A stretch of DNA of 63,778 nt, the filler included, from Reticulomyxa filosa (taxonomy: Eukaryota; Protista; Foraminifera), in the NCBI GenBank assembly GCA_000512085.1. It is 27 parts of 27 records of this genome, joined end to end, with 100 filler letters (N's around TTAATTAATTAA, not from the genome) between each part and the next. Parts side by side here need not be neighbours in the genome. Positions count along the whole stretch, not along the records: positions 52,781 to 54,941 come from ASPP01023189.1; 26 more parts are not named here. The stretch is one strand, 5' to 3'. The notes beneath the pieces are model-generated. The model saw only the letters and a list, made by a program, of their open reading frames with translations, had not been told where the DNA came from and did no database searches. The translations under genes and the position numbers were made by a program. Shown one piece after another: positions 53,286 to 55,194 of the stretch; the first letter of the stretch is position 1; the number at the start of each line of letters is the position of its first letter.

Positions 53286-53403
53286 AGGTTCCGTAATATG
53301 CAGTTTTACCTTTGGGATGGCAGTGTGACTCTAGCATCAGCTGACAGACCCACCATTTGGGGGTAAGTGCGCGTAGCACCCGCACCGGAGCCTATTTTTT
53401 TTT
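53286..53403 (+). ncRNA. Candidate ~108-nt structured small RNA with a Pol III-like T9 terminator, family unassigned
   Basis: GC-rich island; terminal helix AGGUUCCG/CGGAGCCU; long G-U-rich helix 53306-53320/53353-53366; hairpin GUGC-GCGUA-GCAC; T9 directly after. Confidence 0.55.
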
Positions 53404-53848
53404 GCTGGAACATGAAATATATTTGAATTGTGATATCTAATTATTTATTGCGAAAAATGTCATGCAGAATTATATGCTTAAACATATTTGCTTGAGTCAA
53501 AAAATTTTAAAGAATTGACTTATATATTCGTTCTTATGTTAAATGAAAAAATGTAGTGTTTAAAAAGTTTGTCTACATGCGATTGAGAATATCACAGACG
53601 CCAAACAAATGACTAAAAAGACAAAGCAAAGCTTTTTAATTCTCAAGGAACAGAGTTAAATCCGACACCATTCAAACCAAAGAACAATTCTTTCGTTTTT
53701 GAATTGGGTATCATCACCACAATTGCATTGCACGCACAAAATCAAAACAAAAAAAGGTGGTTTAACATTCATGCAAACATTTTTTTTTCTTTTAATCGTG
53801 TGGTTCTTCTTGATTACATTTTGTTTGAACATTTGTGTAACATTTTTT

Positions 53849-53952
53849 TCCCATAACCGGCTGTTAAATGGCAGCGTATCAATCAAAATTTGTAATGTAT
53901 GTGTAATTCCTTTGATTGATTCAACTGTCGATTCGTCTAACAGCCGGCGGGA
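53849..53952 (-). promoter_or_regulatory. Long stem-loop immediately 3' of an in-frame UGA (candidate recoding element)
   Basis: Nested perfect 10-bp helices 53857-53866/53938-53947 and 53878-53887/53911-53920, with a UCCC/GGGA base. Confidence 0.55.
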
Positions 53953-54454
53953 CCTCAGGCCGAACGAGGGGCAGCCTGTGGCAGGTCACTGATAGTTCGA
54001 ACTCGCAAGGGCCTATTCCGGTTTCCTCCATCCCCCGGTCTCTTACCGGAGCTCCCTCCATTGGCTTGGCTCCGTTTGTCATTCACATACATAAATATGC
54101 TTCCAAGTAGCAATACTATAAAGGCTGTAAATCCATAGCGCCAATCCCAGTATGCTGATCACACGTTTTGTGTTTATGTTGCATCTTATATTTTACCGTA
54201 CTTCCATTTGTAAGTTGATCCAAAGATAAATAAATTAAAAAATAACAAGCACAAAAAATCACTGTCACTCAACTGAGACCACTACATAAGCAGACCAACA
54301 AGTAAAGCACTATTGCTTTCTTTGAACACAACGTGTCTTTGCTACACCATGAAGGCTTCTTACAGTTCGAAGAACAGCGAAAAGTTCTTTCAGTTCCCAA
54401 AGGATTGTAGCCTTTGGAATCTTGTTGAATCACTCCATTCAAAATGCGCGGCAT
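53937..54454 (-). CDS. Small membrane protein, candidate selenoprotein (SelK/FAM241-like layout), 132 aa if the UGA is decoded
   Basis: Exons 54454-54274 and 54154-53937 (GT-AG, phase 1): MPRILNGVIQQDS...AIVLYLLVCLCSGLTYWDWRYGFTAFIVLLLGSIFMYVNDKRSQANGGSSGKRPGDGGNRNRPLRVRTISDLPQAAPRSA-TGA-GPAGC-TAG. Confidence 0.7.
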
Positions 54455-55194
54455 TTTTTTTTGGCTCTGATGAACTTTTTTAAATTTTTTTTTGAAACAC
54501 TTTTTGGTTAGTTTTAAACCAACAATAATTTTTAACCGCATGTTTATTTAATGCGTACATTTTGCAATCCTTATTTTAATACGTGTCCAAAAAAAAAGAG
54601 TTGTTTTTTAAATAGACATTATTTGCATGATAATGATGCAACACAAAAGTAATACACAAATTTTAGAAATTCTCCAAGATACTCAATAAGACGAGCGACC
54701 GACGTTATGAGGAGATCTGCAACCAAATCAAACAAAGCAAAACGAAATAAAAAATATCAGCAGCAAATTTTCCACATGTTAAAAGTTAGTCGTGAAGCAC
54801 GTGGTTTGCTCTTGCATATTTTTTTAAAAAGGCAAAACAATTCGAACATTTTCAAGTGTCACAGATAAAAATTTTGCAATTTTCACCAGATAGTGAAAAT
54901 AGTAAGTGTTGTCAATTGCATTTCTTATGAACCAGAGTAGGNNNNNNNNNNNNNNNNNNNNNNNNNNNNNNNNNNNNNNNNNNNNTTAATTAATTAANNN
55001 NNNNNNNNNNNNNNNNNNNNNNNNNNNNNNNNNNNNNNNNNGATAAAATATAGTTTTTTAACAATAATTTGAAAAAACGCTTCTACGTTTGAATTTCTGT
55101 TCTGTAACAAAGATTACAAATTGAAAACTGTGTTGTGACGCTAAATCAAGGTTTTGAAAAAGGAGAACAAGATAGTAAACTTTTTCAATATAAC

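What the first reader, a model, noticed from the sequence alone, without database searches (positions are those of the whole stretch)
53937..54454. Hidden candidate selenoprotein with an inverted C-terminal U-x4-C motif
Seen: splicing 54454-54274 to 54154-53937 gives two hydrophobic segments, a Gly/Arg/Pro-rich tail, then TGA (53955-53957), GPAGC and TAG. The GC-rich coding-like composition continues through the TGA and drops after the TAG. The ORF track shows none of this. Established: SelK/SelS-type selenoproteins are small membrane proteins with a Gly/Pro/Arg tail and Sec within a few residues of the C-terminus, some with a Cys five residues upstream. Inference: here Sec would come first and Cys last (U-GPAG-C), and the TM hairpin and MxRILxNG start look closer to FAM241 than to SelK. 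This may be an undescribed selenoprotein family.
Basis: partly seen in the sequence, partly recalled or inferred. Interest (0 to 1): 0.9.

Follow-up and report, generated by a model that had tools for sequence, protein, structure and literature searches.

The report
Mis-annotated SelK-like selenoprotein candidate, Reticulomyxa
This small membrane-protein gene of the foraminiferan Reticulomyxa filosa is most likely a mis-annotated member of the widespread selenoprotein K family, probably with a selenocysteine codon near its end, not a new selenoprotein family.

Summary
On the minus strand, ATG 54454 opens a frame. Then come TGA (53957-53955), GPAGC and TAG (53939-53937). GC stays at 61-67% through the TGA and drops to 28% right after the TAG.

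The piece is Reticulomyxa filosa contig ASPP01023189.1. The locus is already annotated as hypothetical protein RFI_26645. That model puts an "intron" over the tail, the TGA and the TAG, a typical mis-call of a selenoprotein gene.

The only Pfam match of either exon is SelK_SelG (exon 2, E=0.0045, 18 bits, below the 23.3 cut-off). No FAM241 or SelS match appeared. The family reading is therefore SelK, not a new family.

A custom scan found one form-2 SECIS-like hairpin on either strand (GUGA 53717-53714, AA 53698-53697, GA 53662-53661). It lies 220 nt past the TAG on the gene's strand. Rfam's SECIS models do not match it, and it has no clear helix I.

I could obtain no orthologue, no RNA reads and no test of Sec machinery. 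A second same-phase donor (GTAAGA, 54363) would remove the first hydrophobic segment.

Odds: SelK family about 0.8; TGA read as Sec about 0.55.

The parts
54274..54454 (-). It starts at ATG 54454 (MPRILNGV...), runs through a Cys-rich linker, and ends in the first hydrophobic segment (54319-54275).
   Evidence: GC is 0.42 in 54454-54364 and 0.41 in 54363-54274, against 0.23 just upstream and 0.29 in the intron.
54358..54363 (-). If used, exon 1 is only 54454-54364 (30 codons plus 1 base) and the first hydrophobic segment becomes intronic.
   Evidence: enumeration of frame-compatible GT/AG pairs. No RNA data are available to choose between the donors.
54155..54273 (-).
   Evidence: The exon-2 frame is closed by a TGA at 54161-54159, so the AG at 54156-54155 is the only acceptor that keeps the whole second hydrophobic segment.
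53958..54154 (-). Exon 2 up to the TGA. It holds the hydrophobic segment (54137-54084) and a 42-aa Gly/Arg/Pro/Ser/Asn-rich tail.
   Evidence: Pfam SelK_SelG: E=0.0045, 18 bits, residues 5-47 aligned to profile positions 25-70 of 86.
53955..53957 (-). In-frame TGA, the candidate selenocysteine codon.
   Evidence: It lies 18 residues past the end of the Pfam alignment, where 16 profile positions remain. That places it near the profile's C-terminal end, where SelK carries Sec (the last point is from memory of the family).
53937..53954 (-). GGT CCC GCC GGC TGT TAG: the codons for GPAGC plus the stop. GC is 13 of 18, and GC drops to 0.28 immediately afterwards.
53661..53717 (-). SECIS-like form-2 hairpin. 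From 5' to 3': GUGA 53717-53714; a helix of 6+6 bp with a 2-nt bulge; unpaired AA at 53698-53697; a mini-helix of 2+6 bp; a 3-nt loop; and GA at 53662-53661 followed by U.
   Evidence: It is the only hit of the custom scan on either strand. Any hit appeared in 12 of 400 (497-nt UTR) and 24 of 400 (1156 nt) dinucleotide shuffles. dG is -17 kcal/mol and z is -2.41. There is no Rfam SECIS match and no clear helix I.
53635..53640 (-). ATTAAA, a possible poly(A) signal about 20 nt after the hairpin.
   Evidence: Read directly. This is inference only.

Best explanation
This is a gene of Reticulomyxa filosa for a small membrane protein of the selenoprotein K (SelK/SelG) family. The public record mis-models it as hypothetical protein RFI_26645.

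Translation starts at ATG 54454. One intron is removed, with its acceptor at 54155 and its donor at either 54273 or 54363. The second exon encodes the SelK-type membrane anchor and a disordered Gly/Arg/Pro-rich tail.

The TGA at 53957-53955 is most likely decoded as selenocysteine, directed by a SECIS-like hairpin in the 3'UTR (53717-53661). The protein would then end in U-G-P-A-G-C.

By analogy with SelK and SelS, the tail would face the cytosol from the ER membrane. Its Sec could form a selenylsulfide with the terminal Cys. This redox pairing and the topology are inferred, not shown.
For: - Identity of the contig and the existing model.
- The annotated model puts an 'intron' over 54046-53937, which covers the tail, the TGA and the TAG. 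It then runs into an AT-rich 3'UTR ORF. That model matches no SelK profile.
- Reading exon 2 contiguously gives the only Pfam hit, SelK_SelG, at E=0.0045.
- The Pfam alignment runs 12 residues past the annotated donor, which argues that the tail is coding.
- GC stays at 0.61-0.67 through the TGA to the TAG, then falls to 0.28.
- There is a single SECIS-like hairpin, on the correct strand, 220 nt after the TAG.
- SelK occurs in nearly all Sec-using eukaryotes (PMC2375036).
- The rhizarian Bigelowiella natans has 23 selenoprotein genes (PMC7539508).
Against: - The Pfam score (18 bits) is below the gathering cut-off (23.3) and rests on exon 2 alone.
- No orthologue was found anywhere, so there is no TGA/Cys column to inspect.
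- Rfam SECIS models give no match, even on a 111-nt slice.
- The hairpin has GUGA rather than AUGA, a 2-nt bulge, AA 16 nt after the UGA, and no convincing helix I.
- My scan criteria were loosened after I had seen the candidate, so the shuffle counts are optimistic.
- Sec machinery in R. filosa could not be checked, and the literature in reach is silent on it.
- No RNA run was listed.
- Sec would be sixth from the end. In SelK and SelS it is the second or third from the end.
Confidence: 0.55

Rival explanations
1. This is a SelK-family homologue without selenocysteine. The TGA is the real stop and the protein ends ...AAPRSA. The GC-rich GPAGC stretch and the hairpin are either coincidental or relics of a lost Sec codon.
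For: - No Rfam SECIS match.
- No helix I.
- Five open codons after a stop are expected by chance in GC-rich sequence.
- The Sec trait has been lost many times in eukaryotes (PMC2375036).
- Sec machinery in R. filosa was not shown here.
Against: - The GC fall comes after the TAG, not after the TGA (13 of 18 GC, p about 3e-4 at UTR composition).
- A SECIS-like hairpin, the only one on either strand, sits in the 3'UTR.
- According to PMC2375036, Sec-less SelK homologues carry Cys at the Sec position. A stop codon there is not the reported pattern.
Confidence: 0.25
2. One reading: this is an undescribed selenoprotein family with a two-helix hairpin, related to FAM241 rather than SelK, and defined by an inverted U-x4-C motif.
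For: - With the donor at 54273 there are two hydrophobic segments.
- The middle part of exon 1 has exon-like GC of 0.41.
- The SelK match is below the Pfam cut-off.
- Sec-x4-Cys at the very end is not the SelK or SelS arrangement.
Against: - SelK_SelG is the only Pfam family matched.
- No FAM241 or other family is reported at E<=10 for either exon.
- The membrane anchor plus G/R/P tail plus near-terminal TGA is the SelK layout.
- No relatives exist that could define a family.
Confidence: 0.07
3. The public model RFI_26645 is essentially right, with an intron at 54046-53937 and a C-terminus in the AT-rich ORF. Alternatively, the locus is a decayed pseudogene or not a gene at all.
For: - GTAAGA at 54046 and AG at 53938-53937 are formally usable splice sites.
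- There is no expression evidence for any model.
Against: - That 'intron' would be about 60% GC, while the other intron and the flanks here are 23-30%.
- It removes the part that matches SelK.
- The downstream ORF has UTR-like composition and no family match.
Confidence: 0.1

Closest known systems
Selenoprotein K (SELENOK / SelK; Drosophila SelG/G-rich); Pfam PF10961 SelK_SelG
   Same: - A small protein.
- An N-terminal M-x-x-I-x-N-G start (as I remember it for human SelK).
- A membrane anchor followed by a disordered Gly/Pro/Arg-rich tail.
- An in-frame TGA close to the C-terminus.
- A Pfam match over the anchor and the first half of the tail.
   Different: - Sec would be followed by five residues ending in Cys (U-GPAG-C). 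SelK has about two residues after Sec and no nearby Cys.
- There may be an extra Cys-rich linker and a second hydrophobic segment, if the donor at 54273 is used.
- The Pfam score is below the gathering cut-off.
- The SECIS candidate is atypical.
Selenoprotein S (SELENOS / VIMP)
   Same: - A single-pass ER membrane protein with a disordered tail and penultimate Sec.
- Its Sec188 is proposed to pair with Cys174 in a selenylsulfide (PMC3628699 abstract). This is the functional analogy for a Sec/Cys pair in the tail.
   Different: - No Pfam SelS match was found.
- SelS is about twice as long and has a coiled coil.
- In SelS the Cys is upstream of Sec by 14 residues. Here it is downstream by 5.
FAM241
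   Same: A small protein with hydrophobic segments.
   Different: No Pfam match other than SelK_SelG was found for either exon at E<=10. FAM241 proteins are not known to be selenoproteins.

Membership tests
SelK_SelG (PF10961) | Profile match above Pfam's gathering score | tested here: inconclusive
Exon 2 alone scores 18 bits against a cut-off of 23.3, at E=0.0045, covering profile positions 25-70 of 86. Exon 1 pieces gave no hit.
SelK_SelG (PF10961) | Small protein (about 90-130 aa) with one membrane anchor near the N-terminus | tested here: inconclusive
   With donor 54363 the protein is 102 aa with one anchor. With donor 54273 it is 132 aa with two hydrophobic segments. No RNA evidence is available.
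SelK_SelG (PF10961) | Gly/Pro/Arg-rich, low-complexity C-terminal tail | tested here: met
   The 42-aa tail is 62% G/R/P/S/N.
SelK_SelG (PF10961) | Sec (UGA) or Cys two to three residues from the C-terminus | tested here: not met
   The TGA is sixth from the end, followed by GPAGC and the stop. It sits near the expected position along the profile, but the tail after it is longer than in the SelK I remember.
Eukaryotic selenoprotein gene | [quoted passage not shown] AA ... GA kink-turn core, helix II, helix I | tested here: inconclusive
   The core, helix II, the unpaired AA and a form-2 mini-helix are present at 53717-53661. There is no Rfam SECIS hit and no helix I.
Eukaryotic selenoprotein gene | The organism has tRNA-Sec, SepSecS, PSTK, SPS2, eEFSec and SBP2 | not testable with these tools
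   Only this 2161-nt contig of R. filosa is available. Literature and supplements were searched without result.
Eukaryotic selenoprotein gene | Orthologues with Sec or Cys aligned at the TGA and conservation after it | tested here: inconclusive
   No relatives were found beyond the locus's own annotated protein. Short truncated ORFs are easily missed by gene callers, so this blank is weak evidence.
FAM241 | Sequence similarity to the family profile | tested here: not met
   No such Pfam hit for either exon at E<=10, nor for the annotated protein at E<=1.

The most novel reading that the evidence does not exclude
This would be the first documented selenoprotein of a foraminiferan. It would be a SelK-family member that has gained a second membrane segment with a Cys-rich linker and a C-terminal Sec-x4-Cys redox pair (Sec first, Cys last). 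Its Sec would be inserted through an atypical GUGA form-2 SECIS that current covariance models miss.
Probability: 0.3. Interest if true: 0.5.

Novelty: new member of a known kind. Interest (0 to 1): 0.35.

Why it matters
If confirmed, this would show that Foraminifera use selenocysteine. It would also correct a mis-annotated Reticulomyxa gene and add a SelK variant whose tail carries its own resolving cysteine. That variant bears on the open question of what chemistry the SelK/SelS tails perform. A working SECIS that Rfam models miss would be a useful test case for selenoprotein finders in AT-rich protist genomes. Even so, SelK is the most widespread eukaryotic selenoprotein, so finding one here is expected rather than surprising.

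Tried and rejected
- **RNA evidence.** The look-up of sequencing runs listed no run.
- **Homologue searches.** All were blank apart from the locus's own annotated protein:
  - word-index search of exon 2 and of exon 1;
  - exhaustive phmmer of exon 2 against 1.84 billion representatives, which returned only P0002 and one 1675-aa hit with no aligned stretch, which I did not inspect;
  - JGI metagenome scan.
- **PDB sequence search.** Only a chance Gly-rich match.
- **ESM Atlas features.** Only generic membrane fragments.
- **Rfam.** No SECIS on the piece, on the 3'UTR or on a 111-nt slice. The weak C/D snoRNA look-alikes come from the GUGAUGA string. Where box D would fall, the sequence reads CUGU, not the CUGA that I recall as the box D consensus, so I rejected that reading.
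- **tRNA scan.** None found.
- **Other SECIS registers.** AUGA at 53714 with GA at 53673, and ATGA at 53772 and 53463, were inspected by hand. I rejected them because helix II was broken or missing.
- **Literature and supplements.** Searches for Sec in Reticulomyxa or Foraminifera found nothing.

Full report
**What is in the sequence**

Read on the minus strand, ATG 54454 opens a frame that translates to a 60-aa peptide beginning MPRILNGV and ending ...CLCSGL. This is followed by GT at 54273. An AG at 54156-54155 precedes a second coding stretch.

Read from 54152, that stretch gives YWDWRYGFTAFIVLLLGSIFMYV, then a 42-residue tail. After the tail come TGA (53957-53955), GPAGC and TAG (53939-53937).

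Both hydrophobic segments are real, with Kyte-Doolittle 15-aa means of 2.15 and 2.33. The tail is 62% G/R/P/S/N.

GC content by segment:

| Segment | GC |
|---|---|
| Upstream of the ATG | 0.23 |
| Exon 1 | 0.41-0.42 |
| Tail | 0.61 |
| TGA to TAG | 0.67 |
| Next 60 nt | 0.28 |

Thirteen of the 18 bases after the TGA are G or C. The binomial probability is 2.7e-4 at UTR composition. Only 12 of 1608 18-nt windows outside the gene reach this level, and all 12 lie in one other GC-rich patch.

Five open codons after a stop mean nothing alone. The position of the composition break is what is informative.

**Where it comes from and what is already annotated**

An exhaustive phmmer search of exon 2 returned one aligned hit, P0002. 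Its other hit, 1675 aa long, had no aligned stretch. P0002 is ETO10732.1, hypothetical protein RFI_26645 of Reticulomyxa filosa, encoded on contig ASPP01023189.1. That contig is 2161 nt long and is this piece.

- It starts at an upstream ATG (54541) in 23%-GC sequence.
- It places an "intron" from GTAAGA at 54046 to the AG of the TAG stop, skipping the tail, the TGA and the TAG.
- It continues in an AT-rich ORF in what I take to be the 3'UTR.

A 60%-GC intron among 23-30%-GC non-coding DNA is implausible. A gene caller stepping around an in-frame stop is the classic failure on selenoprotein genes. The annotated protein matches no SelK profile.

**Family**

Pfam reports exactly one family at E<=10 for either exon. 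It is SelK_SelG (PF10961) on exon 2, with E=0.0045 and 18 bits against a cut-off of 23.3. Residues 5-47 align to profile positions 25-70 of 86.

The alignment extends 12 residues beyond the annotated donor, which supports the tail as coding. After the aligned part, 18 residues remain before the TGA, against 16 remaining profile positions. The TGA therefore falls about where the profile ends. As I remember the family, that is where SelK carries Sec. The M-x-x-I-x-N-G start also matches my memory of human SelK (MVYISNGQV). Neither point was tested here.

No FAM241 or SelS match appeared. [quoted passage not shown] SelK is therefore the first selenoprotein to expect in a new lineage. I conclude this is a SelK-family gene, not a new family. 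The score is sub-threshold on a partial query, so I put membership at about 0.8.

**Exon structure**

Enumerating frame-compatible GT/AG pairs shows a second donor in the same phase. It is GTAAGA at 54363, and it looks more canonical than GTTGAG at 54273.
- With 54363, the protein would be 102 aa with a single anchor, the textbook SelK layout.
- With 54273, it would be 132 aa with a Cys-rich linker and an extra hydrophobic segment.

The segment between the two donors has exon-like GC (0.41, against 0.29 in the intron). The public model also chose 54273.

The acceptor at 54155 is well constrained. The frame is closed just upstream by a TGA at 54161-54159, and later acceptors truncate the anchor.

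**Is the TGA a Sec codon?**

Evidence for:
- the family context;
- the composition break after the TAG;
- a SECIS-like hairpin.

Rfam found no SECIS on the piece, on the 3'UTR or on a 111-nt slice.

I wrote my own scan. It required [A/G]UGA, then an abutting single hairpin with at least 9 pairs, then an unpaired AA 9-16 nt in, and a closing GA. It found one hit on either strand of the whole piece. The hit has these parts:
- GUGA at 53717-53714;
- a U-G closing pair;
- helix II of 6+6 bp with a 2-nt bulge;
- unpaired AA(A) at 53698-53697;
- a 2+6 bp mini-helix with a 3-nt loop;
- GA at 53662-53661, followed by U. This allows the U-U, G-A, A-G quartet.

This is the form-2 SECIS layout. It starts 220 nt after the TAG, on the gene's strand, and an ATTAAA lies about 20 nt downstream of it.

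Any hit appeared in 12 of 400 dinucleotide shuffles of the 497-nt UTR, and in 24 of 400 shuffles of 1156 nt. One or none of those hits was as stable as the real one. The hairpin folds at -17 kcal/mol with z=-2.41.

Caveats:
- I relaxed the criteria after seeing the candidate.
- G replaces the usual A before UGA.
- Helix II is at the long end of the usual range.
- No helix I is predicted.
- The covariance models do not match it.

I treat the hairpin as suggestive, not as proof.

**What could not be tested**
- No sequencing run was listed.
- No orthologue was found in protein collections or JGI metagenomes.
- The rest of the R. filosa genome is out of reach, so tRNA-Sec, SepSecS, eEFSec, SBP2 and SPS2 remain unchecked.
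- Literature and supplement searches found nothing on Sec in Reticulomyxa or Foraminifera.
- The nearest indirect support is 23 selenoprotein genes in the rhizarian Bigelowiella natans (PMC7539508).

**Mechanism (inferred)**

By analogy with SelK and SelS, this would be an ER-membrane protein whose disordered tail faces the cytosol and carries Sec near its end. Here a Cys five residues after Sec could act as a resolving residue and form an intramolecular selenylsulfide. This resembles the Cys174-Sec188 pair proposed for SelS (PMC3628699 abstract), but in the opposite order. As I recall, mammalian SelK has no such Cys. None of this chemistry is shown here.

**Verdict**

Probabilities:

| Reading | Probability |
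|---|---|
| SelK-family gene with Sec | about 0.55 |
| SelK-like gene ending at the TGA | about 0.25 |
| Annotated model correct, or a pseudogene | about 0.10 |
| New family | about 0.07 |

It is a new member of a known kind, with a possibly variant C-terminus and topology. Interest is modest at 0.35.

Noticed in passing
window 53306-53413 (-): This is the only other GC-rich patch of the contig (GC about 0.5). It holds an ATG-started 35-codon open frame (MFQQKKIGSGAGATRTY...) that ends at a GTAAAA donor-like site. It may be the first exon of a downstream gene on the same strand. If so, the SelK-like 3'UTR would be limited to about 500 nt. There is no Pfam hit.
   Followed up: partly
window 53711-53722 (-): The SECIS-like core reads GGUGAUGA, which matches what I recall as the box C consensus of C/D snoRNAs. 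It draws weak Rfam snoRNA hits (snR47 at 18.9 bits, SNORD53/92 at 12.2 bits). Where box D would fall, the sequence reads CUGU, not CUGA as I recall the consensus.
   Followed up: yes
window 54619-54735 (-): A short open frame follows a TTGCAG acceptor-like site (…DLLITSVARLIEYLGEFLKF…), with slightly raised GC of 0.36-0.37. It may be the last exon of an upstream gene. There is no Pfam hit.
   Followed up: partly
window 53937-54541 (-), public model ETO10732.1: The public R. filosa annotation avoids the in-frame stops by calling a 60%-GC 'intron' over the coding tail. Other selenoprotein genes of this assembly may be hidden in the same way.
   Followed up: partly
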